Source: Euprymna scolopes
Taxonomy: Eukaryota
NCBI GenBank assembly: GCA_053919585.1
Contig: CM132785.1
Length of the DNA stretch: 64,000 nt
Strand: one strand, 5' to 3'
In this document: in pieces, positions 154 through 64,000 of the stretch
Position numbering within the stretch: position 1 is the stretch's first letter
Layout of the letters: every line of letters starts with the position of its first letter
Made by a program: the position numbers and the translations under genes
The notes under the pieces: model-generated
The model's input: only the letters and a program-made list of their open reading frames with translations
Told to the model about the DNA's origin: nothing
Database searches by the model: none

Positions 154-333
154 CTCCACGGCCGCCTCCCATTTTTTCTAGCGTATCTCTTGCTCTGCGA
201 AGATCGGAACTGACTTCTGGCAGACATGCTCTTTCACCTTCCTCTATCAAACTTTTCAGGGCACTCATATCTTTAGAAGCAATCGCTTTCTTCAATCTAG
301 TGCGCAGACCCTCCGGGCTGACCAATACAGTTT
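154..333 (-). CDS. Exon, class A module (ETVLVSPEGLRTRLKKAIASKD...EKMGGGRG), 180 nt
   Basis: Acceptor tttcatcAG at 335-334; donor GTTAG at 153-149. Confidence 0.9.
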
Positions 334-3300
334 CTGATGAAATGAAAGATAGATTCAATTTTAAAAGATTATTTTCTATGTATGCAATGTCGCATGAAGA
401 CAGATATGCACATATATATGATATGTATTTGTGTATCGCAGCATCACAGTTAAACAGTTGATCAGAGAGATAAACAAATTACGGATTTCAATCGACACAT
501 TTGGTCTAATGATTTATAGATGTCAAAAGTTCTAGAATTTTTCTAAAACAGATTATTCAAAATTAAAAGTATGTAACAATAAACTTAGAAACAAATATTC
601 CGACATTTTAGTATTGCTTTTTATAAAGAACTAAGTCTCATGTTGAATCATCCTACATATTTGATGCATAGTTCATTTTTAAGAAAAACCGTATAGAGAG
701 TTCCAAAATTAACCACCTATTTTGATATTAATTTTTATTTCAAAATAGATGGTTAATTTTTGGACAAACTGTATATTAACTTAATTATAACTAATTAACC
801 ATCAAAATAGATGGTTAATTTTTGGATAAACTGTATATTCGTTTTTTTTATTATAAAAATGAATAAGATCACTACTACATTTTTACTTTAATAAGAATTT
901 TTATTTTATATTCATGTTAAATTATTTTTATTTATTTTAAACAATCAAATTTTTTAATATCTGTGTAGAGACATAAAACAATCCCTAACCAAACTCACTC
1001 GAATAGGTAAAAATGAAAAAATATTTTTTTATTTTGCTTCTTGGTAAAGCATTCGCCTTCAGTTGCCATATATTATGATATTTTGAGTTCAAATCTAACA
1101 TTAGCAACTTGCTTTTTTTTCTAAGTTTTATTTGCTATGGCATCATTTTCTTGAATAAATATTTAATTAATATCCTTAATTTTTTATCTTGGCCATAAAA
1201 TTCAGGAAAATTTAAGCAATTCCACATGAACGGAGTTTTCAGTAAATATTTTATGATTAGCTTTTAATAAATCATTTTACGTTATATATTTGTTAACTGA
1301 GCATACATATTCTACAAAAATGAGAGATACATAATAACTGTGCCCACCTCTTTTTGGGGTTTCTTTCATGTCATATAATCTTTTTCTGGCACGTTGAATG
1401 GTTGAATCAAGTTCAGGCATACCTGCAGACACACACTGAATCATAACTGCCTCAAGTGTGTCTCTGTCTCCCTCTCTAATTGCTGACCTTAACTGATCAC
1501 GCAGTGTATCAGCTGATAATTGGCCTGAAGGTAAACGGTCAATGAGATCAATAACACAGAAGAAGATTGACAAAAATGATAGAAAATACACTACGTGCGT
1601 TAAGAGAAAATTGCAACCAATTTACAACAACTGACCTCCACGACCACCTCCCAAATTCTCTAGAACGTCCCTGGCTTTGCGAAGATCAGTCGATAGTTCT
1701 GGATATCTGGCAGATTCTGTTTCCAAAATTGCTTTCTCCAAGGCATTAATGTCTTTATCGTTGATAGCCAATGCCAATTGATCACGAAGTGTGTCTGGTA
1801 ATTTCACATCTGCCCAGAAAAAAGATTCCAAGCCATCAACAGAATTCAATTGCGAAGCTAACTACCAACATTACATTACAAAGAGAGTCGTATTAGAAAA
1901 CAATCAAATTCCATCGATCAACAAAAGAATGCAAATCTAACCTCCAGTGCCACCGCGTAGAATATCTGCTACACTTCTGGCCTTCTGGATATCAGCTGCC
2001 AGCTCTGGCATTCCAGCTGAAACACATTCGTTGATCGCTTTGTCCAACATGACTTTATCTTTCCTTTTCATTGCTTCATTTAATTTATTGTGGAGAAAAT
2101 CTGCCCTTTTAGTACCTGGTAAACCAATGAAAAATTATCGGTTAGAGTCTCAAAATATTACAAGATTTATTCAAGAAGTAATTTCACTGAATTTAAAAGT
2201 GAGAATATAACATGCGATTCTAACCTCCACGTCCACCACCAAGACTTTCCAAGGTGTCTCTTGCTTCAAGAAGATCTGAACTCACTTCTGGCAGGAAAGC
2301 CAGTTCTGCTTCTTTTATTACATTCTGAAGATCTTGTTCATCTTTTGATGCAATTGATTTCCTTATTTTTTCTCGTAAGGTGTCAGGGTTGACTAATATA
2401 GTTTCTAAAATAATTAAAACAACGTTAAAACAAATGGTGAATGTTTTAATATTGAAGACATGTCGATTTTCTATAAACAATTAGTTATTCACTTGTTTAA
2501 CACTGGCATTTAAGTTTCTGTGGCATAGTATCAAAAAGGAGCTTCGATCTTGCTTGTTTGAATTACATCATGTAAAACTTCTTTGGTTAATTTCAATATA
2601 TATCTGTTTCTAATAATAGAATGTTTTAGTTGTAATTCAGAGAGAAAATGTTTTTAAAAATGCTTAATAAAAATTAAACATGACAGAAGCACTACAAATA
2701 CTAAGCATGATAAGGCATTCTGAATAATTCTACCAGAGGCAGGGTTAGTATAATGCGAAACCTAACTAAAAGGGTTAATATAACCGCAACACAACGGTGG
2801 TAAAATCCAACAACTGTCTTTCACATAATTTTGCACTTTAAATCAAATAATATGAAATAGATTTAACATTGAGGAGCTATTAATAAACAGGAAATTTCTT
2901 TTAGAGTAATAATAGGAAACATTAGATAGACAAGAGTAAATGAATGTGCAAATTCAAACCTCGCTTTGGTGCATCATCCATTGCCTGTAACTTTCGCTTG
3001 GCTCGCTGTATAGAAACATCAAGTTCAGGCATACCTGCTGCTATGCATACTGTCAAAATTGCTTCCAAGTTTGCTCTATCTCCCTCTCTGATCGCCGATT
3101 TTAATTGATCACGCAATGTTACAGCTGATAATTTACCTAATGTACAAAAGTGAACAACACAAATGACATGAAAAGACCCTGCCTGATGAGAAATACGTCA
3201 AATACACAATGTGCGGTAAGAGAAAATTGCAACCAATTTATAACAACTGACCTCCACGACCACCTCCCAAATTCTCTAGAGCGTCCCTGGCTTTGCGAAG

Positions 3301-6300
3301 ATCAGTCGATAGTTCTGGATATCTGGCAGATTCTGTTTCCAAAATTGCTTTCTCCAGAGCCTTAATGTTCTTTTGCCTGATAGCCAATGTCAATTGATCA
3401 CGAAGTGTGTCTGGTAATTTCACATCTGCCCAGAAAAAAAAATTCATGCCATCAACAGAATAAATCGCGAAGCTAACTACCAATATTACATTACAAAGAG
3501 AGTCATATTAGAAAATAATCAAATTCCACCGACCAACAAAAGAATGCAAATCTAACCTCCAGTGCTACTGCGTAGAATATCTGCTACACTTCTGGCCTTC
3601 TGGATATCAGCTGCCAGCTCTGGCATTCCGGCTGAAACACATTCGCTGATCACTTTGTCCAACACGGTTCTGTCTTTTGCTTTCATCGCCTCGTCCAATT
3701 TTGCACGCAGACTGTCAACACTCTTAGTTCCTGACAAAGCACAATTACCAAGCATAAGTCAACAATAAATACGCCCCCACTATTCTTGAACAATACATAG
3801 AAATAACACATACTATATCGAATGCAAAGTATTTAGAAGGAAATCTAACCTCCGCGGCCACCACCCAGACTTTCCAGAGTGTCTCTGGCTTTAACTAGCT
3901 CTGAGCTCAATTCTGGAAGAGCTGCTTCTTCGGCCTCTTCTATCACGCTTTGCAAAGCGCTTATGTCTTTCGATGCGATTGCTTTCTTCAGTTTATCGCG
4001 AACACTGGTCGGGCTGGCCCATTCCGATTCTGCTAAAATTAACAAGAAACCTCCATTGAAACCAGCTAGAGAATGAGCCAGAAAACGAGGCAATAATAAA
4101 TCAGAATCATTATTATTTCCATAAAGCAATCACCTAAGAAAGAAATTTGGCAAAATTCAAACTTTATCACCTAACACTGGTTAAGATAACTGGATGAATT
4201 TCTAGCGATTAATGTTTGTAAATAATGTTAAATCCCGAGTGTGCCCACCTCGTTTTGGAGCCTCTTCCAAGTCTTGTAAAGTATGCCTGGCACGCTGTAT
4301 GGCAGAGTCGAGTTCAGGCATACCAGCGGACACACATTCAAGTAAAACAGCCTCCAGACTTTCTCTGTCTCCCTCTCTGATCGCTGTCCTTAACTGATCG
4401 TCCAATATGTCAGCTGATAATTTACCTAATGTACAAAAGTGAACAACACAAATAACATGAAAAGACCCTGCCTGATGAGAAATACGTCAAATACACAACG
4501 TGCGTTAAGAGAAAATTGCAACCAATTTACAACAACTGACCTCCACGACCACCTCCCAAATTCTCTAGAACGTCCCTGGCTTTGCGAAGATCAGTCGATA
4601 GTTCTGGATATCTGGCAGATTCTGTTTCCAAAATTGCTTTCTCCAAGGCATTAATGTCTTTATCGTTGATAGCCAATGTCAATTGATCACGAAGTGTGTC
4701 TGGTAATTTCACATCTGCCCAGAAAAAAAAATTCATGCCATCAACAGAATTCAATCGCGAAGCTAACTACCAACATTACATTACAAAGAGAGTCGTATTA
4801 GAAAATAATCAAATTCCAACAAAACAATGCAAATCTAACCTCCAGTGCCACCGCGTAGAATATCTGCTACACTTCTGGCCTTCTGGATATCAGCTGCCAG
4901 CTCTGGCATTCCGGCTGAAACACATTCGCTGATCACTTTGTCCAACACGGTTCTGTCTTTTGCTTTCATCGCCTCGTCCAATTTTGCACGCAGACTGTCA
5001 ACACTCTTAGTTCCTGACAAAGCACAATTACCAAGCATAAGTCAACAATAAATACGCCCCCACTATTCTTGAACAATACATAGAAATAACACATACTATA
5101 TCGAATGCAAAGTATTTAGAAGGAAATCTAACCTCCGCGGCCGCCACCCAGACTTTCCAGAGTGTCTCTGGCTTTAACTAGCTCTGAGCTCAATTCTGGA
5201 AGAGCTGCTTCTTCGGCCTCTTCTATCACGCTTTGCAAAGCGCTTATGTCTTTCGATGCGATTGCTTTCTTCAGTTTATCGCGAACACTGGTCGGGCTGG
5301 CCCATTCCGATTCCGCTAAAATTAACAAGAAACCTCCATTGAAACCAGCTAGAGAATGAGCCAGAAAACGAGGCAATAATAAATCAGAATCATTATTATT
5401 TCCATAAAGCAATCACCTAAGAAAGAAATTTGGCAAAATTCAAACTTTATCACCTAACACTGGTTAAGATAACTGGATGAATTTCTAGCGATTAATGTTT
5501 GTAAATAATGTTAAATCCCGAGTGTGCCCACCTCGTTTTGGAGCCTCTTCCAAGTCTTGTAAAGTATGCCTGGCACGCTGTATGGCAGAGTCGAGTTCAG
5601 GCATACCAGCGGACACACATTCAAGTAAAACAGCCTCCAGACTTTCTCTGTCTCCCTCTCTGATCGCTGTCCTTAACTGATCGTCCAATATGTCAGCTGA
5701 TAATTTACCTAATGTACAAAAGTGAACAACACAAATAACATGAAAAGACCCTGCCTGATGAGAAATACGTCAAATACACAACGTGCATTAAGAGAAAATT
5801 GCAACCAATTTACAACAACTGACCTCCACGACCACCTCCCAAATTCTCTAGAACGTCCCTGGCTTTGCGAAGATCAGTCGATAGTTCTGGATATCTGGCA
5901 GATTCTGTTTCCAAAATTGCTTTCTCCAGAGCCTTAATGTCCTTTTGCCTGATAGCCAATGTCAATTGATCACGAAGTGTTTCTGGTAATTTCACATCTG
6001 CCCAGAAAAAAAAATTCATGCCATCAACAGAATTCAATCGCGAAGCTAACTACCAACATTACATTACAAAGAGAGTCATATTAGAAAATAATCAAATTCC
6101 AACAACAAACAAAACAATGCAAATCTAACCTCCAGTGCCACCGCGTAGAATATCTGCTACACTTCTGGCCTTCTGGATATCAGCTGCCAGCTCTGGCATT
6201 CCGGCTGAAACACATTCGCTGATCACTTTGTCCAACACGGTTCTGTCTTTTGCTTTCATCGCCTCGTCCAATTTTGCACGCAGACTGTCAACACTCTTAG

Positions 6301-9300
6301 TTCCTGACAAAGCACAATTACCAAGCATAAGTCAACAATAAATACGCCCCCACTATTCTTGAACAATACATAGAAATAACACATACTATATCGAATGCAA
6401 AATATTTAGAAGGAAATCTAACCTCCGCGGCCGCCACCCAGACTTTCCAGAGTGTCTCTGGCTTTAACTAGCTCTGAGCTCAATTCTGGAAGAGCTGCTT
6501 CTTCGGCCTCTTCTATCACGCTTTGCAAAGCGCTTATGTCTTTCGATGCGATTGCTTTCTTCAGTTTATCGCGAACACTGGTCGGGCTGGCCCATTCCGA
6601 TTCTGCTAAAATTAACAAGAAACCTCCATTGAAACCAGCTAGAGAATGAGCCAGAAAACGAGGCAATAATAAATCAGAATCATTATTATTTCCATAAAGC
6701 AATCACCTAAGAAAGAAATTTGGCAAAATTCAAACTTTATCACCTAACACTGGTTAAGATAACTGGATGAATTTCTAGCGATTAATGTTTGTAAATAATG
6801 TTAAATCCCGAGTGTGCCCACCTCGTTTTGGAGCCTCTTCCAAGTCTTGTAAAGTATGCCTGGCACGCTGTATGGCAGAGTCGAGTTCAGGCATACCAGC
6901 GGACACACATTCAAGTAAAACAGCCTCCAGACTTTCTCTGTCTCCCTCTCTGATCGCTGTCCTTAACTGATCGTCCAATATGTCAGCTGATAATTTACCT
7001 AATGTACAAAAGTGAACAACACAAATAACATGAAAAGACCCTGCCTGATGAGAAATACGTCAAATACACAACGCGCGTTAAGAGAAAATTGCAACCAATT
7101 TACAACAACTGACCTCCACGACCACCTCCCAAATTCTCTAGAACGTCCCTTGCTTTGCGAAGATCAGTCAATAGTTCTGGATATCTGGCAGATTCTGTTT
7201 CCAAAATTGCTTTCTCCAGAGCCTTAATGTCCTTTTGCCTGATAGCCAATGTCAATTGATCACGAAGTGTGTCTGGTAATTTCACATCTGCCCAGAAAAA
7301 AAAATTCATGCCATCAACAGAATTCAATCGCGAAGCTAACTACCAACATTACATTACAAAAAAAAATCGTATTAGAAAATAATCAAATTCCAACAAAACA
7401 ATGCAAATCTAACCTCCAGTGCCACCGCGTAGAATATCTGCTACACTTCTGGCCTTCTGGATATCAGCTGCCAGCTCTGGCATTCCGGCTGAAACACATT
7501 CGCTGATCACTTTGTCCAACACGGTTCTGTCTTTTGCTTTCATCGCCTCGTCCAATTTTGCACGCAGACTGTCAACACTCTTAGTTCCTGACAAAGCACA
7601 ATTACCAAGCATAAGTCAACAATAAATACGCCCCCACTATTCTTGAACAATACATAGAAATAACACATACTATATCGAATGCAAAGTATTTAGAAGGAAA
7701 TCTAACCTCCGCGGCCGCCACCCAGACTTTCCAGAGTGTCTCTGGCTTTAACTAGCTCTGAGTTCAATTCTGGAAGAGCTGCTTCTTCGGCCTCTTCTAT
7801 CACGCTTTGCAAAGCGCTTATGTCTTTCGATGCGATTGCTTTCTTCAGTTTATCGCGAACACTGGTCGGGCTGGCCCATTCCGATTCCGCTAAAATTAAC
7901 AAGAAACCTCCATTGAAACCAGCTAGAGAATGAGCCAGAAAACGAGGCAATAATAAATCAGAATCATTATTATTTCCATAAAGCAATCACCTAAGAAAGA
8001 AATTTGGCAAAATTCAAACTTTATCACCTAACACTGGTTAAGATAACTGGATGAATTTCTAGCGATTAATGTTTGTAAATAATGTTAAATCCCGAGTGTG
8101 CCCACCTCGTTTTGGAGCCTCTTCCAAGTCTTGTAAAGTATGCCTGGCACGCTGTATGGCAGAGTCGAGTTCAGGCATACCAGCGGACACACATTCAAGT
8201 AAAACAGCCTCCAGACTTTCTCTGTCTCCCTCTCTGATCGCTGTCCTTAACTGATCGTCCAATATGTCAGCTGATAATTTACCTAATGTACAAAAGTGAA
8301 CAACACAAATAACATGAAAAGACCCTGCCTGATGAGAAATACGTCAAATACACAACGTGCATTAAGAGAAAATTGCAACCAATTTACAACAACTGACCTC
8401 CACGACCACCTCCCAAATTCTCTAGAACGTCCCTGGCTTTGCGAAGATCAGTCGATAGTTCTGGATATCTGGCAGATTCTGTTTCCAAAATTGCTTTCTC
8501 CAGAGCCTTAATGTCCTTTTGCCTGATAGCCAATGTCAATTGATCACGAAGTGTTTCTGGTATTTTCACATCTGCCCAGAAAAAAAAATTCATGCCATCA
8601 ACAGAATTCAATCGCGAAGCTAACTACCAACATTACATTACAAAGAGAGTCATATTAGAAAATAATCAAATTCCAACAACAAACAAAACAATGCAAATCT
8701 AACCTCCAGTGCCACCGCGTAGAATATCTGCTACACTTCTGGCCTTCTGGATATCAGCTGCCAGCTCTGGCATTCCGGCTGAAACACATTCGCTGATCAC
8801 TTTGTCCAACACGGTTCTGTCTTTTGCTTTCATCGCCTCGTCCAATTTTGCACGCAGACTGTCAACACTCTTAGTTCCTGACAAAGCACAATTACCAAGC
8901 ATAAGTCAACAATAAATACGCCCCCACTATTCTTGAACAATACATAGAAATAACACATACTATATCGAATGCAAAGTATTTAGAAGGAAATCTAACCTCC
9001 GCGGCCGCCACCCAGACTTTCCAGAGTGTCTCTGGCTTTAACTAGCTCTGAGCTCAATTCTGGAAGAGCTGCTTCTTCGGCCTCTTCTATCACGCTTTGC
9101 AAAGCGCTTATGTCTTTCGATGCGATTGCTTTCTTCAGTTTATCGCGAACACTGGTCGGGCTGGCCCATTCCGATTCTGCTAAAATTAACAAGAAACCTC
9201 CATTGAAACCAGCTAGAGAATGAGCCAGAAAACGAGGCAATAATAAATCAGAATCATTATTATTTCCATAAAGCAATCACCTAAGAAAGAAATTTGGCAA

Positions 9301-12300
9301 AATTCAAACTTTATCACCTAACACTGGTTAAGATAACTGGATGAATTTCTAGCGATTAATGTTTGTAAATAATGTTAAATCCCGAGTGTGCCCACCTCGT
9401 TTTGGAGCCTCTTCCAAGTCTTGTAAAGTATGCCTGGCACGCTGTATGGCAGAGTCGAGTTCAGGCATACCAGCGGACACACATTCAAGTAAAACAGCCT
9501 CCAGACTTTCTCTGTCTCCCTCTCTGATCGCTGTCCTTAACTGATCGTCCAATATGTCAGCTGATAATTTACCTAATGTACAAAAGTGAACAACACAAAT
9601 AACATGAAAAGACCCTGCCTGATGAGAAATACGTCAAATACACAACGTGCGTTAAGAGAAAATTGCAACCAATTTACAACAACTGACCTCCACGACCACC
9701 TCCCAAATTCTCTAGAACGTCCCTGGCTTTGCGAAGATCAGTCGATAGTTCTGGATATCTGGCAGATTCTGTTTCCAAAATTGCTTTCTCCAGAGCCTTA
9801 ATGTCCTTTTGCCTGATAGCCAATGTCAATTGATCACGAAGTGTGTCTGGTAATTTCACATCTGCCCAGAAAAAAAAATTCATGCCATCAACAGAATTCA
9901 ATCGCGAAGCTAACTACCAACATTACATTACAAAGAGAGTCGTATTAGAAAATAATCAAATTCCAACAAAACAATGCAAATCTAACCTCCAGTGCCACCG
10001 CGTAGAATATCTGCTACACTTCTGGCCTTCTGGATATCAGCTGCCAGCTCTGGCATTCCGGCTGAAACACATTCGCTGATCACTTTGTCCAACACGGTTC
10101 TGTCTTTTGCTTTCATCGCCTCGTCCAATTTTGCACGCAGACTGTCAACACTCTTAGTTCCTGACAAAGCACAATTACCAAGCATAAGTCAACAATAAAT
10201 ACGCCCCCACTATTCTTGAACAATACATAGAAATAACACATACTATATCGAATGCAAAGTATTTAGAAGGAAATCTAACCTCCGCGGCCGCCACCCAGAC
10301 TTTCCAGAGTGTCTCTGGCTTTAACTAGCTCTGAGCTCAATTCTGGAAGAGCTGCTTCTTCGGCCTCTTCTATCACGCTTTGCAAAGCGCTTATGTCTTT
10401 CGATGCGATTGCTTTCTTCAGTTTATCGCGAACACTGGTCGGGCTGGCCCATTCCGATTCTGCTAAAATTAACAAGAAACCTCCATTGAAACCAGCTAGA
10501 GAATGAGCCAGAAAACGAGGCAATAATAAATCAGAATCATTATTATTTCCATAAAGCAATCACCTAAGAAAGAAATTTGGCAAAATTCAAACTTTATCAC
10601 CTAACACTGGTTAAGATAACTGGATGAATTTCTAGCGATTAATGTTTGTAAATAATGTTAAATCCCGAGTGTGCCCACCTCGTTTTGGAGCCTCTTCCAA
10701 GTCTTGTAAAGTATGCCTGGCACGCTGTATGGCAGAGTCGAGTTCAGGCATACCAGCGGACACACATTCAAGTAAAACAGCCTCCAGACTTTCTCTGTCT
10801 CCCTCTCTGATCGCTGTCCTTAACTGATCGTCCAATATGTCAGCTGATAATTTACCTAATGTACAAAAGTGAACAACACAAATAACATGAAAAGACCCTG
10901 CCTGATGAGAAATACGTCAAATACACAACGTGCGTTAAGAGAAAATTGCAACCAATTTACAACAACTGACCTCCACGACCACCTCCCAAATTCTCTAGAA
11001 CGTCCCTGGCTTTGCGAAGATCAGTCGATAGTTCTGGATATCTGGCAGATTCTGTTTCCAAAATTGCTTTCTCCAGAGCCTTAATGTCCTTTTGCCTGAT
11101 AGCCAATGTCAATTGATCACGAAGTGTGTCTGGTAATTTCACATCTGCCCAGAAAAAAAAATTCATGCCATCAACAGAATTCAATCGCGAAGCTAACTAC
11201 CAACATTACATTACAAAGAGAGTCGTATTAGAAAATAATCAAATTCCAACAAAACAATGCAAATCTAACCTCCAGTGCCACCGCGTAGAATATCTGCTAC
11301 ACTTCTGGCCTTCTGGATATCAGCTGCCAGCTCTGGCATTCCGGCTGAAACACATTCGCTGATCACTTTGTCCAACACGGTTCTGTCTTTTGCTTTCATC
11401 GCCTTGTCCAATTTTGCACGCAGACTGTCAACACTCTTAGTTCCTGACAAAGCACAATTACCAAGCATAAGTCAACAATAAATACGCCCCCACTATTCTT
11501 GAACAATACATAGAAATAACACATACTATATCGAATGCAAAGTATTTAGAAGGAAATCTAACCTCCGCGGCCGCCACCCAGACTTTCCAGAGTGTCTCTG
11601 GCTTTAACTAGCTCTGAGCTCAATTCTGGAAGAGCTGCTTCTTCGGCCTCTTCTATCACGCTTTGCAAAGCGCTTATGTCTTTCGATGCGATTGCTTTCT
11701 TCAGTTTATCGCGAACACTGGTCGGGCTGGCCCATTCCGATTCTGCTAAAATTAACAAGAAACCTCCATTGAAACCAGCTAGAGAATGAGCCAGAAAACG
11801 AGGCAATAATAAATCAGAATCATTATTATTTCCATAAAGCAATCACCTAAGAAAGAAATTTGGCAAAATTCAAACTTTATCACCTAACACTGGTTAAGAT
11901 AACTGGATGAATTTCTAGCGATTAATGTTTGTAAATAATGTTAAATCCCGAGTGTGCCCACCTCGTTTTGGAGCCTCTTCCAAGTCTTGTAAAGTATGCC
12001 TGGCACGCTGTATGGCAGAGTCGAGTTCAGGCATACCAGCGGACACACATTCAAGTAAAACAGCCTCCAGACTTTCTCTGTCTCCCTCTCTGATCGCTGT
12101 CCTTAACTGATCGTCCAATATGTCAGCTGATAATTTACCTAATGTACAAAAGTGAACAACACAAATAACATGAAAAGACCCTGCCTGATGAGAAATACGT
12201 CAAATACACAACGTGCGTTAAGAGAAAATTGCAACCAATTTACAACAACTGACCTCCACGACCACCTCCCAAATTCTCTAGAACGTCCCTGGCTTTGCGA

Positions 12301-46351: not shown

Positions 46352-46420
<69 letters not shown>

Positions 46421-46729
46421 GTCCTTTTCTTTCTCATTTTTTAAATATATTTCTGCAATATTTTATAAAAAAACATCTTATACTTCATTTAGGTTTTATA
46501 TTCATGACATAAATTATGTTCATGTTATTTTTGTAATAACGTAGTTCTCTTTTTTAGCATTTATACATTTTACGATGTATATATATTGTGAAAATTTATT
46601 TTACCTTGTTTTTTTACCCTCCCTCACCTTACAAAATTTAAGTTGAGCACTGTAATCGAACTTATTTCTCCTAATATATTTTCATACTATATATGAAATG
46701 TAAACTCCAATAATTTTATGTTGTTCCTG

Positions 46730-46774
<45 letters not shown>

Positions 46775-47252: not shown

Positions 47253-47309
<57 letters not shown>

Positions 47310-48099
47310 GTGTGTGTGTGCGTGTGTCACTTTGTAGTGTGCTTGAGTTCCTTCCTCATAGTTTCCGAAACGACTGAGCCTATCTTTTGCAAATTTCACA
47401 CAAATCTTATTTAAATGTCTGGCAGTGTTCTTAGACATGTTTTATATAGATCTTAATCCGATAAGTATTAAAAATCGAAAAAGTCCGATCTTAAAAAAAG
47501 CTTTTCTTCGTCATAGATAAAAAAAGAATAATTTTTACATGGGAATATTTCTCGTTACATCGGCAAGAGAGATAATAAAATTTCAGCAGATAACTTCTTC
47601 TTGAAAAAAACCCCAGATTAATTATAATTTGGAGATATAGCTTACTGGCAGAGTATTTGACTATAGATCGAATGATTCCCTGTTTAAGCCAGGGTATACC
47701 ACACCATTTTATTATATTTTTTTTATTAATAATGAGTTCACTTTACGATAAAAGAATAGGCAAAATTTAAAATCGCTGCAAATCATTTCTTCGTTTGCAT
47801 ATTTTAAAATTAATCAGAAGTGACTTTTCCAGGGCATTCATCGTCAAGCCAAAATAGCAACTGACGTGATATTGTAAACAAACACAGACGAAATTTGATA
47901 AACGACATTATCATTATTATTTTTTTTTTTTTTTATACATTTTTTTTTTTTTTGCGAATTCGTCGATAAGGTAAATTATTCCTCATAGTATATAATTATT
48001 AATAGAGAATTGATTCTATAATAATACATATGCAATCTGCATAAATTAAAATATCATGTTCAAGCGTATTGCATGACGGGCAACACCGGGCTGCCAGCT

Positions 48100-48155
<56 letters not shown>

Positions 48156-49544: not shown

Positions 49545-49610
<66 letters not shown>

Positions 49611-53115: not shown

Positions 53116-53249
53116 NNNNNNNNNNNNNNNNNNNNNNNNNNNNNNNNNNNNNNNNNNNNNNNNNNNNNNNNNNNNNNNNNNNNNNNNNNNNNNNNNNNNN
53201 NNNNNNNNNNNNNNNNNNNNNNNNNNNNNNNNNNNNNNNNNNNNNNNNN
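53116..53249. other. Assembly gap (134 N)
   Basis: Run of n characters. Confidence 0.99.
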
Positions 53250-54131: not shown

Positions 54132-54133
<2 letters not shown>

Positions 54134-54173: not shown

Positions 54174-54175
<2 letters not shown>

Positions 54176-54477: not shown

Positions 54478-54705
54478 CTCCTCTACCGGAATGCACACAT
54501 ATATTTTATGTTATATTTTTGTGTATATATATATTTAATATGAATTATCATTGGAATTTTATCCCTAAACATTCCAGTAAATCGTAAGGTTTAAATAGGT
54601 CATTAGCAATCACAACTTCTGCAATTGCTTTATCCAAAGCCTTGATGTCTTTTTGTCTAATAGCCATGGTCAGTTGGTCACGCAGTGTGTCGGCCAATTT
54701 CACAT
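54478..54705 (-). pseudogene. Disrupted class C exon (stop-containing): decayed exon or terminal exon of the array-2 transcript
   Basis: Nearly identical to the array-2 C exon up to ...KAIAE. It then has an 18-nt in-frame deletion of the ARYPE turn, many substitutions, TGA at 54550-54548, AT-rich filler, and a residual in-frame GGT AGA GGA G|GTATGA at 54487-54472. Confidence 0.6.
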
Positions 54706-57700
54706 CTGACGAACAAATAAGTTTTACCGTCATTATACATAGCAATCCTACATATTGTATACATCTTGGGAAATTTCCAAGAAAAATGCACATTTTCAAA
54801 ATCGATTACAACATCAATAATACTATCAATCTAACCTCCAGTGCCACCACGAAGAATGTCTGCTAAACTTCTAGCCTTCTGGATATCAGTTTCCAGCTCT
54901 GGCATTCCGACTGACACACATTCGCTGATAACCTTGTCCAAAATGATTCTGTCTTTCGCTTTCATTGCTTCCTCCAATTTACTACGTAGTCCATCAACAC
55001 TCTTACTTCCTAACAAGCGAAAAATAACAACAATCATGAGCAACAATAACCACATCGGATGTATTGAATAAAATGCATTAATTTCAAATCCATCACACTA
55101 AAGCACACAATGCATGATTAAAATTCTAACCTCCACGTCCTCCTCCCAAACTTTCCAGAGTGTCCCTGGCTTTACGTAGATCGGAGCTCACTTCGGGAAA
55201 GGCTGCTTCTTCAGCTTCTCCGATCACACTTTGAAGACTGCGTATATCTTTTGAGGCGATCGCTTTCTTTATTTTATCGCGCACATTCTCAGGACTCACA
55301 GTTACGCTTTCTGTTAAGACAAGCACAATTGACGCACTCAATAACATTACAGAAATAATGTAACGTATTCTGATTTGATTCAAATGCATCTATCAGTAAA
55401 CTGAAATTCTCAAATGATCATTCAAACATCGTTTTTAAATAGAATCTCAACATAGATACGCACAAGAATCATGAAAATATCAATATATATATTTGCCCAC
55501 CTCTTCTTGGCATTTCTTCCAAGTCATCCACAAGTTGTCTTGCTTGCTGTACAGCAGAATCTAGTACTGGCATACCAGCAGACACACATTCATTGATCAC
55601 ACCTTCCAGAGTCTCTATATCGCCATCTTGACTTGCTCTTCTTAGTTTTGCAAGCAATATTTCAGGCGATAATATTCCTATTAGATGAAACAAGCGATTT
55701 ACGTTAAACAAATCTTACAACATAGCAACACTACAAATCCGCTCCTAATCATGCAGTATATATATTAAATCTTTTATCTATTTTGATCTAAATAATTAAT
55801 CGTATATCACTAGAATAATCATTTTGTTAATTATTATTTGCTAAGTATAACCTCTCAACTAAAATTTGTTTTTCTACAAGTAACATAATTACAAACTACA
55901 GCAGGTATGCAAATATAATTATCTATACGATTCAATGAATACATGATGTTATGTGGAGCACAACGTGCGTCAATCAGGGTTTGGTAGATGAACTTATCCT
56001 TATCTATATAATCGTTAGATATATAAGCTGAAATTCAAATTTGAACACTAACCTCCGGTACCACCTCCTAGGCTTTTAAGTGTTTCTCTAGCTTCCTGCA
56101 GATCGCAACTCAATTCTGGGTATCTGGCAGCTTCACATTCTGTAATAGCTTCTTTTAATGCTGTCGTATCTTTGCTTCTAACAGCTTCGGCAATTTTCTC
56201 ACGCAAACTCTCCGCAGATTTAATATCTAACAAGCAGAAGCACAATCCAATTGCAAAACACTTTCGATAATTATGAATTTATTCGGTAAATAATAGAGCA
56301 AGTACTTATTTATACACACTTCAGCAAGAAATATCTCTTATAATGAATCATTCATGAAAAATACGTGAATTAAACACAAGTTTTAAATAAAGTAAATATT
56401 GAAGAAGTTCTAACCTCCACTTCCTCCACGAAGAATATCTAAAAGTTTCCGTGCTTTATCGATATCGGCGTCTAATTCTGGTATTCCAGCTGATACACTT
56501 TCAGTAATAACTTTCTCAAGCAGAGATTTGTCTTGTTTTCTCATGGCTTCTGTCAGTTTCGCTCTCACACTGTCCACATTTGTCGTTCCTGTTAAGCAAA
56601 CGTTTCACAAATACAAACACTGTCACAATATTACACTGAAAGCGACAACTAGTGATAAAGAAAAAGAATATAAAATGAAATTTTCCATGCAAGACAAATG
56701 AAATTTAAGTGAGAATTATTCTAACCTCCGAGACCACCTCCTAACTGTTGAAGGGCTTCTCTTGCTTTCCGTAGCACTGAACTCAGTTCTGGCAATGCGG
56801 CACGCTCGGCACCTTCGATAACTCTTTCCAGACTAGCTTTGTCTTTGGAGTCGCTCGCTTTTTCCAGCTCATCCCGTAATTCACGCACAGACTTCTTTGG
56901 CATTTCTGACAACGGCAACAAACCATTACCATATATTAGTTTAATTTCTTAAAAATTGACCTAAATCATTGTTTTAAATTTACAACTGAAAGTAACCAGA
57001 ATTTGAGTTCAATTAAATAAAACACCCACCTCCTATTCTGGCGTATCCAATAGGGGATAAATTGCGCCTAGCCTCTTGGATTACACTATCCAATTCTGGC
57101 ATTCCAGCCGCTACACATTCACTGATCACATTCTCCAAACTGTCCTTATCTCCAACTCTCATAGTTGTCCTCAATTTCTCTCGTAAAGCGTCCGCTGTTA
57201 AAGTACCTACAATTTCAAATTCACAATTCCCTTTCTCAAACCGATTTAATCACTAATGTAATTTCATAAATTATTACATTTGAATTCTATTCTACTACAG
57301 GACACTCAGTTACTACCAGAGGTTAGATTCTACCGCCGCTCCTCCGCCAATATTATTTCTATAAATCATATATGATTCACTAGTTAAAAAAGTGTCCTCT
57401 TCGACTTTTCAATAATTTTTCATTCAACGGGATTTGATATCAAAGTAATAATTCCAATAGATAATCTCGTTCATAATATTATTAAATTCTACTGACGTAA
57501 ACCTCTTATTATCAGCTCAATATACCAACACAGAAAAGAAGATGTATTTTTTCACTTTCCGAAATGTACAATTTGAAAATGATGCAATCTAATAAAGCAG
57601 ACTTTAGAAACTGACCTCCTCGTCCTCCACCTAAACTTTCCAGTGAATCGCGGGCTTTACGTAGGTCACTGGCAATCTCTGGGTATCTGGCAACCTCAGC

Positions 57701-60700
57701 TTCTGCAATTGCTTTATCCAAAGCCTTGATGTCTTTTTGTCTAATAGCCATGGTCAGTTGGTCACGCAGTGTGTCGGCCGATTTCACATCTGACGAACAA
57801 ATAAGTTTTACCGTCATTATACATAGCAATCCTACATATTGTATACATCTTGGGAAATTTCCAAGAAAAATGCACATTTTCAAAATCGATTACAACGTCA
57901 ATAATACTATCAATCTAACCTCCAGTGCCACCACGAAGAATGTCTGCTAAACTTCTAGCCTTCTGGATATCAGTTTCCAGCTCTGGCATTCCGACTGACA
58001 CACATTCGCTGATAACCTTGTCCAAAATGATTCTGTCTTTCGCTTTCATTGCTTCCTCCAATTTACTACGTAGTCCATCAACACTCTTACTTCCTAACAA
58101 GCGAAAAATAACAACAATCATGAGCAACAATAACCACATCGGATGTATTGAATAAAATGCATTAATTTCAAATCCATCACACTAAAGCACACAATGCATG
58201 ATTAAAATTCTAACCTCCACGTCCTCCTCCCAAACTTTCCAGAGTGTCCCTGGCTTTACGTAGATCGGAGCTCACTTCGGGAAAGGCTGCTTCTTCAGCT
58301 TCTCCGATCACACTTTGAAGACTGCGTATATCTTTTGAGACGATCGCTTTCTTTATTTTATCGCGCACATTCTCAGGACTCACAGTTACGCTTTCTGTTA
58401 AGACAAGCACAATTGACGCACTCAATAACATTACAGAAATAATGTAACGTATTCTGATTTGATTCAAATGCATCTATCAGTAAACTGCAATTCTCAAATG
58501 ACCATTCAAACATCGTTTTTAAATAGAATCTCAACATAGATACGCACAAGAATCATGAAAATATCAATATATATATTTGCCCACCTCTTCTTGGCATTTC
58601 TTCCAAGTCATCCACAAGTTGTCTTGCTTGCTGTACAGCAGAATCTAGTACTGGCATACCAGCAGACACACATTCATTGATCACACCTTCCAGAGTCTCT
58701 ATATCGCCATCTTGACTTGCTCTTCTTAGTTTTGCAAGCAATATTTCAGGCGATAATATTCCTATTAGATGAAACAAGCGATTTACGTTAAACAAATCTT
58801 ACAACATAGCAACACTACAAATCCGCTCCTAATCATGCAGTATATATATTAAATCTTTTATCTATTTTGATCTAAATAATTAATCGTATATCACTAGAAT
58901 AATCATTTTGTTAATTATTATTTGCTAAGTATAACCTCTCAACTAAAATTTGTTTTTCTACAAGTAACATAATTACAAACTACAGCAGGTATACAAATAT
59001 AATTATCTATACGATTCAATGAATACATGATGTTATGTGGAGCACAACGTGCGTCAATCAGGGTTTGGTAGATGAACTTATCCTTATCTATATAATCGTT
59101 AGATATATAAGCTGAAATTCGAATTTGAACACTAACCTCCGGTACCACCTCCTAGGCTTTTCAGTGTTTCTCTAGCTTCCTGCAGATCGCAACTCAATTC
59201 TGGGTATCTGGCAGCTTCACATTCTGTAATAGCTTCTTTTAATGCTGTCGTATCTTTGCTTCTAACAGCTTCGGCAATTTTCTCACGCAAACTCTCCGCA
59301 GATTTAATATCTAACAAGCAGAAGCACAATCCAATTGCAAAACACTTTCGATAATTATGAATTTATTCGGTAAATAATAGAGCAAGTACTTATTTATACA
59401 CACTTCAGCAAGAAATATCTCTTATAATGAATCATTCATGAAAAATACGTGAATTAAACACAAGTTTTAAATAAAGTAAATATTGAAGAAGTTCTAACCT
59501 CCACTTCCTCCACGAAGAATATCTAAAAGTTTCCGTGCTTTATCGATATCGGCGTCTAATTCTGGTATTCCAGCTGATACACTTTCAGTAATAACTTTCT
59601 CAAGCAGAGATTTGTCTTGTTTTCTCATGGCTTCTGTCAGTTTCGCTCTCACACTGTCCACATTTGTCGTTCCTGTTAAGCAAACGTTTCACAAATACAA
59701 ACACTGTCACAATATTACACTGAAAGCGACAACTAGTGATAAAGAAAAAGAATATAAAATGAAATTTTCCATGCAAGACAAATGAAATTTAAGTGAGAAT
59801 TATTCTAACCTCCGAGACCACCTCCTAACTGTTGAAGGGCTTCTCTTGCTTTCCGTAGCACTGAACTCAGTTCTGGCAATGCGGCACGCTCGGCACCTTC
59901 GATAACTCTTTCCAGACTAGCTTTGTCTTTGGAGTCGCTCGCTTTTTCCAGCTCATCCCGTAATTCACGCACAGACTTCTTTGGCATTTCTGACAACGGC
60001 AACAAACCATTACCATATATTAGTTTAATTTCTTAAAAATTGACCTAAATCATTGTTTTAAATTTACAACTGAAAGTAACCAGAATTTGAGTTCAATTAA
60101 ATAAAACACCCACCTCCTATTCTGGCGTATCCAATAGGGGATAAATTGCGCCTAGCCTCTTGGATTACACTATCCAATTCTGGCATTCCAGCCGCTACAC
60201 ATTCACTGATCACATTCTCCAAACTGTCCTTATCTCCAACTCTCATAGTTGTCCTCAATTTCTCTCGTAAAGCGTCCGCTGTTAAAGTACCTACAATTTC
60301 AAATTCACAATTCCCTTTCTCAAACCGATTTAATCACTAATGTAATTTCATAAATTATTACATTTGAATTCTATTCTACTACAGGACACTCAGTTACTAC
60401 CAGAGGTTAGATTCTACCGCCGCTCCTCCGCCAATATTATTTCTATAAATCATATATGATTCACTAGTTAAAAAAGTGTCCTCTTCGACTTTTCAATAAT
60501 TTTTCATTCAACGGGATTTGATATCAAAGTAATAATTCCAATAGATAATCTCGTTCATAATATTATTAAATTCTACTGACGTAAACCTCTTATTATCAGC
60601 TCAATATACCAACACAGAAAAGAAGATGTATTTTTTCACTTTCCGAAATGTACAATTTGAAAATGATGCAATCTAATAAAGCAGACTTTAGAAACTGACC

Positions 60701-63700
60701 TCCTCGTCCTCCACCTAAACTTTCCAGTGAATCGCGGGCTTTACGTAGGTCACTGGCAATCTCTGGGTATCTGGCAACCTCAGCTTCTGCAATTGCTTTA
60801 TCCAAAGCCTTGATGTCTTTTTGTCTAATAGCCATGGTCAGTTGGTCACGCAGTGTGTCGGCCGATTTCACATCTGACGAACAAATAAGTTTTACCGTCA
60901 TTATACATAGCAATCCTACATATTGTATACATCTTGGGAAATTTCCAAGAAAAATGCACATTTTCAAAATCGATTACAACGTCAATAATACTATCAATCT
61001 AACCTCCAGTGCCACCACGAAGAATGTCTGCTAAACTTCTAGCCTTCTGGATATCAGTTTCCAGCTCTGGCATTCCGACTGACACACATTCGCTGATAAC
61101 CTTGTCCAAAATGATTCTGTCTTTCGCTTTCATTGCTTCCTCCAATTTACTACGTAGTCCATCAACACTCTTACTTCCTAACAAGCGAAAAATAACAACA
61201 ATCATGAGCAACAATAACCACATCGGATGTATTGAATAAAATGCATTAATTTCAAATCCATCACACTAAAGCACACAATGCATGATTAAAATTCTAACCT
61301 CCACGTCCTCCTCCCAAACTTTCCAGAGTGTCCCTGGCTTTACGTAGATCGGAGCTCACTTCGGGAAAGGCTGCTTCTTCAGCTTCTCCGATCACACTTT
61401 GAAGACTGCGTATATCTTTTGAGACGATCGCTTTCTTTATTTTATCGCGCACATTCTCAGGACTCACAGTTACGCTTTCTGTTAAGACAAGCACAATTGA
61501 CGCACTCAATAACATTACAGAAATAATGTAACGTATTCTGATTTGATTCAAATGCATCTATCAGTAAACTGCAATTCTCAAATGACCATTCAAACATCGT
61601 TTTTAAATAGAATCTCAACATAGATACGCACAAGAATCATGAAAATATCAATATATATATTTGCCCACCTCTTCTTGGCATTTCTTCCAAGTCATCCACA
61701 AGTTGTCTTGCTTGCTGTACAGCAGAATCTAGTACTGGCATACCAGCAGACACACATTCATTGATCACACCTTCCAGAGTCTCTATATCGCCATCTTGAC
61801 TTGCTCTTCTTAGTTTTGCAAGCAATATTTCAGGCGATAATATTCCTATTAGATGAAACAAGCGATTTACGTTAAACAAATCTTACAACATAGCAACACT
61901 ACAAATCCGCTCCTAATCATGCAGTATATATATTAAATCTTTTATCTATTTTGATCTAAATAATTAATCGTATATCACTAGAATAATCATTTTGTTAATT
62001 ATTATTTGCTAAGTATAACCTCTCAACTAAAATTTGTTTTTCTACAAGTAACATAATTACAAACTACAGAAGGTATGCAAATATAATTATCTATACGATT
62101 CAATGAATACATGATGTTATGTGGAGCACAACGTGCGTCAATCAGGGTTTGGTAGATGAACTTATCCTTATCTATATAATCGTTAGATATATAAGCTGAA
62201 ATTCAAATTTGAACACTAACCTCCGGTACCACCTCCTAGGCTTTTAAGTGTTTCTCTAGCTTCCTGCAGATCGCAACTCAATTCTGGGTATCTGGCAGCT
62301 TCACATTCTGTAATAGCTTCTTTTAATGCTGTCGTATCTTTGCTTCTAACAGCTTCGGCAATTTTCTCACGCAAACTCTCCGCAGATTTAATATCTAACA
62401 AGCAGAAGCACAATCCAATTGCAAAACACTTTCGATAATTATGAATTTATTCGGTAAATAATAGAGCAAGTACTTATTTATACACACTTCAGCAAGAAAT
62501 ATCTCTTATAATGAATCATTCATGAAAAATACGTGAATTAAACACAAGTTTTAAATAAAGTAAATATTGAAGAAGTTCTAACCTCCACTTCCTCCACGAA
62601 GAATATCTAAAAGTTTCCGTGCTTTATCGATATCGGCGTCTAATTCTGGTATTCCAGCTGATACACTTTCAGTAATAACTTTCTCAAGCAGAGATTTGTC
62701 TTGTTTTCTCATGGCTTCTGTCAGTTTCGCTCTCACACTGCCCACATTTGTCGTTCCTGTTAAGCAAACGTTTCACAAATACAAACACTGTCACAATATT
62801 ACACTGAAAGCGACAACTAGTGATAAAGAAAAAGAATATAAAATGAAATTTTCCATGCAAGACAAATGAAATTTAAGTGAGAATTATTCTAACCTCCGAG
62901 ACCACCTCCTAACTGTTGAAGGGCTTCTCTTGCTTTCCGTAGCACTGAACTCAGTTCTGGCAATGCGGCACGCTCGGCACCTTCGATAACTCTTTCCAGA
63001 CTAGCTTTGTCTTTGGAGTCGCTCGCTTTTTCCAGCTCATCCCGTAATTCACGCACAGACTTCTTTGGCATTTCTGACAACGGCAACAAACCATTACCAT
63101 ATATTAGTTTAATTTCTTAAAAATTGACCTAAATCATTGTTTTAAATTTACAACTGAAAGTAACCAGAATTTGAGTTCAATTAAATAAAACACCCACCTC
63201 CTATTCTGGCGTATCCAATAGGGGATAAATTGCGCCTAGCCTCTTGGATTACACTATCCAATTCTGGCATTCCAGCCGCTACACATTCACTGATCACATT
63301 CTCCAAACTGTCCTTATCTCCAACTCTCATAGTTGTCCTCAATTTCTCTCGTAAAGCGTCCGCTGTTAAAGTACCTACAATTTCAAATTCACAATTCCCT
63401 TTCTCAAACCGATTTAATCACTAATGTAATTTCATAAATTATTACATTTGAATTCTATTCTACTACAGGACACTCAGTTACTACCAGAGGTTAGATTCTA
63501 CCGCCGCTCCTCCGCCAATATTATTTCTATAAATCATATATGATTCACTAGTTAAAAAAGTGTCCTCTTCGACTTTTCAATAATTTTTCATTCAACGGGA
63601 TTTGATATCAAAGTAATAATTCCAATAGATAATCTCGTTCATAATATTATTAAATTCTACTGACGTAAACCTCTTATTATCAGCTCAATATACCAACACA

Positions 63701-64000
63701 GAAAAGAAGATGTATTTTTTCACTTTCCGAAATGTACAATTTGAAAATGATGCAATCTAATAAAGCAGACTTTAGAAACTGACCTCCTCGTCCTCCACCT
63801 AAACTTTCCAGTGAATCGCGGGCTTTACGTAGGTCACTGGCAATCTCTGGGTATCTGGCAACCTCAGCTTCTGCAATTGCTTTATCCAAAGCCTTGATGT
63901 CTTTTTGTCTAATAGCCATGGTCAGTTGGTCACGCAGTGTGTCGGCCGATTTCACATCTGACGAACAAATAAGTTTTACCGTCATTATACATAGCAATCC
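54615..64000. repeat. Tandem array 2: at least 3 near-identical units of 3084 bp, each with 8 exons
   Basis: ORFs recur at exactly +3084 (54831/57915/60999; 55126/58210/61294; 56721/59805/62889). Introns are nearly identical between units. Confidence 0.96.
54836..63957 (-). CDS. Upstream segment or paralog of the same repeat protein: 24 intact exons (3 x 8), ~1,410 aa; continues past the right window edge
   Basis: Top-unit exons: 63784-63957, 63198-63374, 62894-63073, 62583-62756, 62221-62394, 61669-61845, 61299-61478, 61004-61177. The same set recurs at -3084 and -6168. All are AG/GT, phase 1-1, and total 1410 nt per unit. Confidence 0.85.

What the first reader, a model, noticed from the sequence alone, without database searches (positions are those of the whole stretch)
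154..63957. Hidden giant 'beads-on-a-string' protein: ~166 symmetric phase-1 exons, one helical module per exon
Seen: what looks like a 1.3-kb satellite with many tiny ORFs is a spliced gene. Every exon examined is a multiple of 3 and has AG/GT ends in phase 1. Each encodes one ~59-aa module with three amphipathic segments (LRDxLxxAIxxKD / LExxIxExxxA / PEL..D...AR..L), usually followed by a Gly-rich linker. Concatenation gives ~8,350 aa below the gap and ~1,410 aa above it, with both ends open. Inference: a mega-dalton-scale elastic, scaffold or ruler protein of tandem three-helix bundles. Its architecture is analogous to titin or nebulin, but I cannot assign the module to a named family. Repeat masking would probably erase or fragment such a gene in automated annotation.
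Basis: partly seen in the sequence, partly recalled or inferred. Interest (0 to 1): 0.92.

Follow-up and report, generated by a model that had tools for sequence, protein, structure and literature searches.

The report
Giant helical-bead gene of a cephalopod
What looks like a 1.3-kb satellite is the middle of one huge spliced animal gene, about 594 kb long, with a kyphoscoliosis-peptidase/hillarin-like head and roughly 630-680 one-exon three-helix "beads", which could encode a titin-sized protein (about 4 MDa) that nobody has described.

Summary
The minus strand of the window carries 166 module exons plus one truncated exon. None lie on the plus strand. All 166 have AG/GT sites in phase 1 and lengths of 174-201 nt, and together they encode 9,799 aa (8,389 below the gap, 1,410 above).

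Most exons sit in two near-identical tandem arrays: 32 units of 4 exons (period 1283/1290 bp) and units of 8 exons (period 3084 bp).

The gene is much larger than the window.
- The same modules run on the same strand for about 563 kb.
- They lie between a kyphoscoliosis-peptidase/hillarin-like head (three Ig-like_KY domains, transglutaminase-like core) about 100 kb upstream and a tail exon about 416 kb downstream.
- Head and tail occur together in one Octopus vulgaris gene model.
- I estimate 630-680 modules, or 37,000-40,000 aa if all are included.

Evidence that it is a real spliced gene:
- Three predicted junctions appear exactly in RNA contigs.
- Diverged modules show dN/dS of about 0.14, while their introns are unalignable.
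- Octopus keeps the same exon-per-module, phase-1 layout.

AlphaFold gives each module as a three-helix bundle. The module has no Pfam family, no solved relative and no literature. Function (tether, spring or scaffold) is inferred only. The scan's earlier notes already flagged other windows of this gene.

The parts
1..26 (-). Last 26 nt (on the + strand) of a B-type module exon that begins before the window (window coordinates -147..26).
154..3136 (-). Six diverged module exons on the 3' side of array 1: 154-333 (A), 1348-1524 (D), 1636-1809 (C), 1942-2115 (B), 2225-2404 (A), 2960-3136 (D).
   Evidence: All have a pyrimidine tract followed by AG, and an AG|GTnAG donor, in phase 1.
3252..44290 (-). 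Array 1: 32 near-identical units (1283 or 1290 bp), each with 4 exons in the order D-A-B-C, so 128 exons. Example unit: D 42824-43000, A 42425-42607 (with a NAGNAG alternative acceptor at 42604), B 42132-42305, C 41826-41999.
   Evidence: The A>B and B>C junctions are seen in polyA RNA contigs.
44406..52740 (-). Eight diverged module exons separated by long introns: 44406-44600, 44698-44871, 46922-47095, 49178-49351, 50534-50707, 50986-51165, 51787-51987, 52564-52740.
45500..46300 (.). High-copy interspersed repeat inside an intron. It is not part of the coding sequence.
   Evidence: word depth of 10^4-10^5 in all four runs, with many ragged joints.
53116..53249 (.). Assembly gap (N) in AT-rich, intron-like DNA.
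54571..54705 (-). Truncated C-type exon at the 3' edge of array 2. Homology to the array exon stops near 54617. The nearest GT (54616) is out of phase. A weak in-phase donor at 54571 would give a 135-nt exon. This exon is probably skipped.
54836..63957 (-). Array 2: 24 exons in near-identical 3084-bp units of 8 exons each (C-D-A-B-C-D-A-B). The array continues for about 10 kb beyond the window's end.

Best explanation
The window is an internal part of one very large protein-coding gene on the minus strand of a cephalopod-like mollusc genome (5.9 Gb).

Layout of the gene, 5' to 3':
- A kyphoscoliosis-peptidase (KY)/hillarin-like head: a transglutaminase-like core, probably catalytically dead, and three Ig-like_KY domains.
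- A Lys/Glu-rich linker.
- An estimated 630-680 modules of about 58 aa, each a small three-helix bundle encoded by its own symmetric phase-1 exon. Most modules are joined to the next by a Gly-rich hinge (GGGRGG or GGTG).
- A short tail.

Two module classes alternate, '...E.E.A.YPEL..DL.KAR..LE.LGGGRG' and '...ECVSAGMPEL..DIQ.AR...', and they form a 4-module super-repeat. Recent unequal crossing-over has amplified 4-exon and 8-exon blocks into the near-identical arrays that fill the window.

Because all exons are phase 1-1, any subset can be spliced together in frame, so isoform length could be tuned.

Inferred mechanism (not shown): an intracellular, micrometre-scale flexible chain of folded beads, anchored through the KY/hillarin-like head to cytoskeletal partners, which acts as a tether, entropic spring or spacer.

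My odds are about 0.85 for the gene anatomy and about 0.35 for this particular function.
For: Shown:
- 336 module matches, all on the minus strand, across the 264 kb that I could read. Of these, 332 have phase-1 AG/GT sites, giving 19,551 aa.
- The two module classes alternate at 94% of steps.
- A head exon with three Ig-like_KY domains lies 98 kb upstream of the window's top end on the same strand (E=1e-58). Further head exons lie at C3:154979295-705 and 154991509-742.
- The tail of Octopus vulgaris CAI9725887 matches C3:154398026-154401640 on the same strand. That octopus model carries head, modules and tail in one protein.
- The motif PEL..D[IL]..AR occurs 302 times on the reverse strand of the whole genome, against 8 on the forward strand and 4-7 in the controls. 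147 of these lie in the 264 kb that I read. Of the others, every listed match on this contig lies at C3:154.405-154.714 Mb.
- Exact predicted junctions in RNA contigs: A>B in run X10 and B>C in run X14, and 99401>98571 in SRR24189497 with an 827-nt GT..AG intron removed.
- Diverged modules: exon identity 75%, median dN/dS 0.14, and below 1 in 50 of 50 pairs. Flanking introns are at random identity.
- Array 1: exon diversity 0.0047 against intron diversity 0.0108, with no stop codon in any of the 128 exons.
- In Octopus bimaculoides, three modules of an NCBI gene model are three phase-1 exons of 174-177 nt with the same boundaries.
- AlphaFold: four three-helix bundles per 4-module unit, pLDDT 83.6. 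Single module: pLDDT 82.8.

Inferred: a single transcript, the total module count, and the function. The function rests on what is known of KY (a Z-disc protein that binds filamin C) and of hillarin (an axon-hillock protein), which I state from my own knowledge.
Against: - No read or contig spans more than two exons, so a single full-length mRNA is not shown.
- Many 'RNA' contigs are collinear with the genome through introns. At the A>B intron the unspliced contig has depth 61 against 83 for the spliced one. They could be pre-mRNA, retained introns or contaminating DNA. No silent control stretch was laid.
- Within array 1, variation is close to neutral (10 synonymous and 21 non-synonymous variants). 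Selection on those young copies is therefore weakly supported.
- About 310 kb of the gene was seen only as pattern or profile hits, not read.
- Copy numbers of near-identical arrays beside an assembly gap may be wrong.
- Octopus models hold at most about 5,242 aa.
- Nothing here bears on tissue, location or binding partners.
Confidence: 0.75

Rival explanations
1. The near-identical arrays in the window are young 'exon satellites' lying inside the real gene. They are transcribed as part of a long pre-mRNA but mostly skipped, so the mature protein is much shorter, a few thousand residues as in the octopus models.
For: The units are about 99% identical, and their variation is close to neutral (10 synonymous and 21 non-synonymous variants). 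Unspliced contigs are abundant. Octopus models hold 16-35 modules, at most 5,242 aa.
Against: All 128 exons are open and keep consensus splice sites. Exon diversity is less than half that of the introns. Spliced A>B and B>C junctions of array-type exons are present in polyA RNA, at a depth comparable to the unspliced form. The octopus models start and end inside modules, so they are partial.
Confidence: 0.15
2. The locus is a cluster of several separate tandem genes of one family, not a single 594-kb gene.
For: NCBI annotates several separate 'uncharacterized protein LOC...' models in the octopus locus. No transcript that spans the locus was seen.
Against: In the 264 kb that I read, every module match lies on one strand. 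I did not look for, and did not see, first or last exons, start-codon exons or a second head there. Those octopus models begin and end in mid-module. The head and tail that share one O. vulgaris model flank the whole array here. All exons are phase-compatible.
Confidence: 0.1
3. The gene is real, but the array copy numbers (and so the size estimates) are assembly errors, collapsed or expanded.
For: An N gap sits 1.3 kb from the edge of the 3084-bp array. The units are near-identical. Logan contigs collapse the array to a single 1313-nt unit.
Against: The units carry private variants, and a 7-bp indel is arranged in blocks (17 units of 1283 bp, 13 of 1290 bp). This is what a read-through assembly gives. 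The diverged 60% of the modules do not depend on copy number.
Confidence: 0.2
4. An alternative function: the hundreds of GGGRGG (RGG-type) hinges make the protein a highly multivalent RNA-binding or condensate-forming scaffold rather than a mechanical tether.
For: 122 of 332 modules end in LGGGRG, and 227 of 332 have at least 3 Gly in their last 7 residues. That RGG motifs are known RNA-binding and arginine-methylation sites is my own knowledge.
Against: Each hinge has only one RGG. The protein is acidic overall (pI 5.35). The conserved positions are the helix cores and the PEL/AR motif, not the hinge.
Confidence: 0.1

Closest known systems
Kyphoscoliosis peptidase (KY) / hillarin family (transglutaminase-like core + Ig-like_KY, PF01841 + PF23265)
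   Same: The 5' head of this gene is a clear member: 84-86% identical to the octopus 'kyphoscoliosis peptidase-like' protein, with three Ig-like_KY domains in this genome. Weak module-like matches (one or two per protein) follow the head in chiton, bivalve, leech and bryozoan relatives.
   Different: Known members have 600-1,400 aa. This gene adds several hundred modules. In the octopus orthologues and other invertebrates, the catalytic Cys seen in fish KY is replaced; the His is replaced in the cephalopod and oyster sequences. Vertebrate KY has no module.
Titin
   Same: Several-megadalton size, hundreds of exons, one domain per symmetric phase-1 exon, super-repeats, and recently duplicated near-identical exon blocks. 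The exon layout permits isoforms that vary in length. The titin side of this comparison is my own knowledge.
   Different: Titin's beads are Ig and FN3 beta-sandwiches plus the PEVK region and a kinase. Here the beads are 57-aa three-helix bundles with Gly-rich hinges. There is no sequence or fold relationship.
Nebulin
   Same: Helical modules arranged in super-repeats, encoded module by module, with a near-identical duplicated exon block (my own knowledge).
   Different: Nebulin modules are about 35-aa single helices with an SDxxYK motif that lie along actin. Here the modules are folded three-helix bundles with PEL...AR motifs, and there is no Pfam match.
Spectrin-repeat rods (spectrin, dystrophin, nesprin)
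   Same: Tandem three-helix bundles that form long cytoskeletal proteins.
   Different: Spectrin repeats have about 106 aa and a continuous helix links neighbouring repeats. Here the modules have about 57 aa and are separated by Gly-rich hinges. There is no Pfam or Foldseek match.
Octopod 'uncharacterized protein' models (O. sinensis LOC115214251, O. bimaculoides LOC106876157/LOC128248363, O. vulgaris CAI9725887, Argonauta hians LOC115214248)
   Same: The same module at 40-65% identity, the same phase-1 exon-per-module layout, and the same head and tail.
   Different: They are annotated as partial fragments of 192-5,242 aa. None is named, described or recognised as one giant gene.

Membership tests
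KY / hillarin family | Ig-like_KY domains (PF23265) | tested here: met
   L040:7832-9271:- (window coordinates 161,832-163,271, same strand) matches PF23265 with E=1.1e-58 in 3 stretches.
KY / hillarin family | Transglutaminase-like core (PF01841) N-terminal to the Ig-like domains | tested here: met
   An exon at C3:154979295-154979705 (minus strand) is 86% identical to residues 78-214 of octopus P0117. The PF01841 match of P0117 (residues 15-124, above Pfam's cut-off) overlaps that exon. The DNA itself could not be fetched.
KY / hillarin family | Catalytic Cys-His-Asp of an active transglutaminase or protease fold | tested here: inconclusive
   In the octopus and Argonauta orthologues, the Cys and His found in fish KY are replaced and the Asp is kept. 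This genome's own exon was not readable. The head is probably a pseudo-enzyme.
KY / hillarin family | The head and the module array belong to one transcript | tested here: inconclusive
   Same strand, and the same order as in the octopus models that join them. No transcript spanning both was seen.
Titin / Ig-FN3 giant muscle proteins | Ig-like I-set and FN3 domains as the repeating unit | tested here: not met
   The modules are all-helical, and no Ig or FN3 family appears in the Pfam scans.
Nebulin | 35-aa nebulin repeats with SDxxYK | tested here: not met
   No Pfam match. The module is 57 aa with three helices, and its consensus lacks the motif.
Spectrin repeat | Three-helix repeat of about 106 aa (PF00435) with helix continuity between repeats | tested here: not met
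   No Pfam match. Helices have 14, 14 and 17 residues, and non-helical Gly-rich hinges separate the modules. No spectrin-type protein appears in the Foldseek lists.
Any curated family or solved structure for the module | A significant match to a profile or fold | tested here: not met
   Pfam: nothing above cut-off. PDB by sequence: only designed helical proteins. Foldseek against PDB and Swiss-Prot: E>1. ESM Atlas: only unnamed clusters.

The most novel reading that the evidence does not exclude
Cephalopods make a single KY/hillarin-headed protein of about 37,000-40,000 residues (about 4 MDa, some 650 three-helix beads). That equals or exceeds titin, so it would be the largest animal protein. 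It would form a previously unseen micrometre-long cytoskeletal filament or tether whose length is set by exon choice and by rapidly evolving exon arrays.
Probability: 0.35. Interest if true: 0.9.

Novelty: new variant of a known kind. Interest (0 to 1): 0.8.

Why it matters
If most exons are used, this gene rivals titin in size. It achieves that size with a different building block, a 57-aa three-helix bundle that has no family, no solved structure and no literature.

It would give cephalopod cell biology (muscle, neurons, skin) a new giant structural component to look for. It would also give a second, independent example of how phase-1 exon cassettes, super-repeats and recent block duplication build megadalton proteins.

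In addition, it shows concretely that standard annotation breaks such genes into anonymous fragments, as seen in the octopus genomes.

Tried and rejected
- Tandem Repeats Finder (maximum period 500) missed the arrays. K-mer spacing found them.
- My first regular expression for the module found nothing, so I replaced it with a profile.
- Pfam scans of single modules and of whole octopus proteins gave only sub-threshold or summed-repeat noise.
- Foldseek of the 4-module and single-module models against PDB, AFDB clusters and Swiss-Prot gave no specific fold relative. The hits were bS20, TPR and designed repeat proteins, all with E>0.1.
- The ESM Atlas returned only unnamed clusters.
- The last protein search, with the C-exon ORF, found only single-module fragments and no two-module spliced product of the array.
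- Cluster look-ups of short hits gave no taxa.
The module count there is therefore an estimate from one pattern with 44-51% sensitivity.
- The first read-laying run was swamped by a high-copy repeat at 45.5-46.3 kb.
- Literature searches on kyphoscoliosis peptidase with cephalopod, on hillarin, and on largest protein with cephalopod found nothing about this gene.
Full report
**1. The observation**

The window is AT-rich, microsatellite-bearing animal DNA with one N run at 53116-53249. K-mer spacing shows two tandem periodicities: 1283/1290 bp from about 3.2 to 44.6 kb, and 3084 bp from about 54.5 kb to the window's end.

A profile built from four modules matches 167 open stretches, all on the minus strand and none on the plus strand. 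For 166 of them there is an AG acceptor behind a pyrimidine tract and a GT donor, both in phase 1. Exon lengths are 174-201 nt, most often 174.

I selected only for GT and for phase, yet the other donor positions also fit a real donor. Among 100 distinct donor contexts, A at -2 occurs in 95%, G at -1 in 99% and G at +5 in 92%.

The exons sum to 9,799 aa, 8,389 below the gap and 1,410 above it.

One array-1 unit reads D 42824-43000, A 42425-42607, B 42132-42305, C 41826-41999 (708 nt = 236 aa), with introns of 119-219 nt.

**2. The gap**

The N run lies in AT-rich non-coding DNA. The nearest exon below it is 52564-52740. Above it, at 1.3 kb, sits a C-type exon whose homology to the array stops near 54617. 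This is where the 3084-bp array ends.

Continuity across the gap cannot be verified, and exons or units may be missing. The frame is not at stake, because every exon is symmetric phase 1. The same module series continues on the same strand on both sides.

**3. The gene is far larger than the window**

The window is G000:C3:154814001-154878000 of a 5.9-Gb assembly.

- In 100 kb fetched on each side, the profile finds 336 modules, all on the minus strand, from -99,410 to +154,552 in window coordinates. Of these, 332 have phase-1 sites, giving 58,653 nt = 19,551 aa.
- Upstream, on the same strand, lie a 480-aa exon with three Ig-like_KY domains (E=1e-58), a Lys/Glu-rich exon, and two further exons matching residues 2-79 and 78-214 of the octopus 'kyphoscoliosis peptidase-like' protein at 79-86% identity.
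- Downstream, the C-terminal tail of Octopus vulgaris CAI9725887 matches C3:154401344-640 and 154398026-220, also on the minus strand. CAI9725887 is a single model with head, 16 modules and tail.
- Head and tail are thus about 594 kb apart and flank the array.

A 32-nt degenerate pattern for PEL..D[IL]..AR occurs 302 times on the reverse strand of the whole genome, against 8 forward and 4-7 in the reversed-pattern controls. 147 of the matches are in the 264 kb that I read, where the pattern catches 44% of modules, or 51% in the downstream part. Every other listed match on this contig lies, regularly spaced, between 154,405,550 and 154,714,000.

That implies about 300-350 more modules, so 630-680 in all. 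If all are used, the protein would have roughly 37,000-40,000 aa plus about 1,100 aa of head and tail. This total is an estimate. I could not fetch that DNA.

Two earlier notes of this scan describe other windows of the same gene, one with 104 and one with at least 50 in-phase helical-module exons.

**4. Is it coding and spliced?**

(a) Selection.
- I compared each diverged module with the module four positions on. Exon nucleotide identity is 75%, median dN 0.165, median dS 1.12 and median dN/dS 0.14. dN/dS is below 1 in all 50 pairs.
- The flanking 100 nt of intron align no better than random DNA (0.56-0.58 against 0.515).
- Inside array 1 the copies are young. Exon diversity is 0.0047 and intron diversity 0.0108, with 10 synonymous and 21 non-synonymous variants and no stop codon in 128 exons. 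The constraint there is only weakly shown.

(b) RNA.
- In polyA RNA-seq contigs, run X10 holds a contig that joins 42305 to 42425 (equivalently 37152 to 37272). It skips 119 nt with GT..AG on the minus strand. This is exactly the predicted A>B junction, at depth 83 against 61 for the unspliced path.
- Run X14 holds a 392-nt contig that joins a B-exon donor (40842) to a C-exon acceptor (38136), again with GT..AG ends.
- A Logan contig (SRR24189497_25331), 99-100% identical to this genome, joins 99401 to 98571. It removes an 827-nt GT..AG intron exactly at my predicted boundaries, while the neighbouring introns are retained, as in a splicing intermediate.
- Many contigs are collinear with the genome through introns. 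Pre-mRNA of a 594-kb gene, intron retention and contaminating DNA all remain possible, and I had no call left for a silent control.

(c) Conservation of structure.
- In O. bimaculoides the three modules of XP_052825468 are three exons of 174-177 nt with the same phase-1 boundaries. A 5,242-aa model overlaps that locus.
- Octopod models P0157-P0160 consist only of contiguous modules and begin and end in mid-module, so they are fragments.

**5. The module**

The consensus of 130 non-redundant modules is xKSPxxLRxKLxxAxxxKDxxxLExxIxECExAGxPELxxDxxxARxxLxxLGGGxG.

AlphaFold gives three helices (residues 4-17, 20-33, 36-52; pLDDT 82.8). An octopus 4-module unit gives 12 helices in four bundles with non-helical hinges (pLDDT 83.6, pTM 0.67).

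Two classes alternate at 94% of steps, forming a 4-module super-repeat (D-A-B-C, or D-A'-B-C downstream) along the whole gene.

No curated family or solved structure matches:
- Pfam gives nothing above cut-off.
- PDB by sequence gives only designed helical proteins.
- Foldseek gives only generic small helical proteins, with E>1.

Outside cephalopods, the profile gives two kinds of match:
- weak C-terminal matches in chiton, bivalve, leech and bryozoan KY/hillarin-like proteins, and none in vertebrate KY;
- repeat-summed matches to 45-aa helical repeats of dinoflagellate, perkinsid and Rhodelphis proteins. Homology there is unproven.

**6. How it most likely works**

Shown: the anatomy of a chain of hundreds of small, independently folding helical bundles, separated by Gly-rich hinges, behind a KY/hillarin-type head. 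In octopus orthologues the transglutaminase-like core of that head has lost the Cys and His that fish KY keeps. The octopus N-terminus shows no obvious signal peptide (by eye), which suggests an intracellular protein.

Inferred: the head docks the protein to cytoskeletal partners, and the bead chain acts as a long flexible tether, entropic spring or spacer. This draws on what is known of KY (a Z-disc protein that binds filamin C) and hillarin (an axon-hillock protein), which I state from my own knowledge. Symmetric phase-1 exons allow the length to be tuned by exon choice. Unequal crossing-over in the arrays lets the length evolve quickly.

An alternative is a multivalent RGG scaffold: 122 of 332 modules end in LGGGRG. 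No data here address tissue, location or partners.

**7. Comparison and novelty**

In architecture the gene works like titin or nebulin: one module per phase-1 exon, super-repeats and duplicated exon blocks. It fails every membership test for those families and for spectrin repeats. By its head it is a member of the KY/hillarin family, but with an unprecedented expansion of the module.

Full-text searches found no paper on it. Databases hold only anonymous octopod fragments.

I rate it a new variant of a known kind. It is of high interest because of its possible titin-class size and its uncharacterised fold unit. The single-transcript claim and the size estimate still need long-read RNA and protein evidence.

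Noticed in passing
window 42604-42607 and the same place in most array-1 units: The A-type exons have a tandem NAGNAG acceptor (ttttag|CAG|AATCG). Use of either AG keeps the frame and would add or drop one residue.
   Followed up: no
L037:4052-4396 and L037:6047-6391 (window coordinates about 128,052-128,393 and 130,047-130,385): Two neighbouring modules lie only a few nucleotides apart in one open frame. tblastn aligns 111 contiguous residues there. These look like two-module exons that have lost their intron.
   Followed up: partly
window 45500-46300: A high-copy interspersed repeat inside an intron. Word depth is 10^4-10^5 in all four RNA runs, with dozens of ragged joints.
   Followed up: no
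window 38025 (and the same place in other units): Contigs of two polyA RNA runs (X10, X14) end inside the C exon and continue with 21 T on the + strand. This fits neither a polyA tail of the sense transcript nor the genome. It may be a priming or assembly artefact.
   Followed up: no
array 1, window 3252-44290: A 7-bp indel in one intron splits the units into 1283-bp and 1290-bp forms that sit in blocks: mostly 1283 bp from about 8.5 to 29 kb and 1290 bp from about 29 to 44 kb. This points to expansion by unequal crossing-over of sub-blocks.
   Followed up: partly
proteins P0007, P0081, P0086, P0095 (dinoflagellates, Rhodelphis) and the AFDB hits: Protist proteins carry long runs of a similar 45-57-aa helical repeat (LxxAIxxxDxxxLxxAIxxAxxxGL...). 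The runs are attached to myosin, kinesin, PARP or SH3 domains. Whether this is homology or convergence is open.
   Followed up: partly
proteins P0176, P0202, P0217, P0221, P0256, P0279, P0285: KY/hillarin-like proteins of chiton, clams, oyster and bryozoan have 1-2 weak module-like matches C-terminal to the head. This suggests that the cephalopod array grew from an ancestral short tail.
   Followed up: partly
L052 (Octopus bimaculoides CM046607.1:38702447-38711637): A gene model of 5,242 residues overlaps the small 192-aa model at the octopus locus. This is the longest annotated fragment that I met.
   Followed up: no
G000:C27:96.02-96.12 Mb, C75:5-14 kb, C21:47.9-49.3 Mb, C2, C17: Other KY/hillarin-like head copies are found in this genome at 25-48% identity, some with stop codons. 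In the searches that I ran, nearly all module matches lay at the C3 locus.
   Followed up: no
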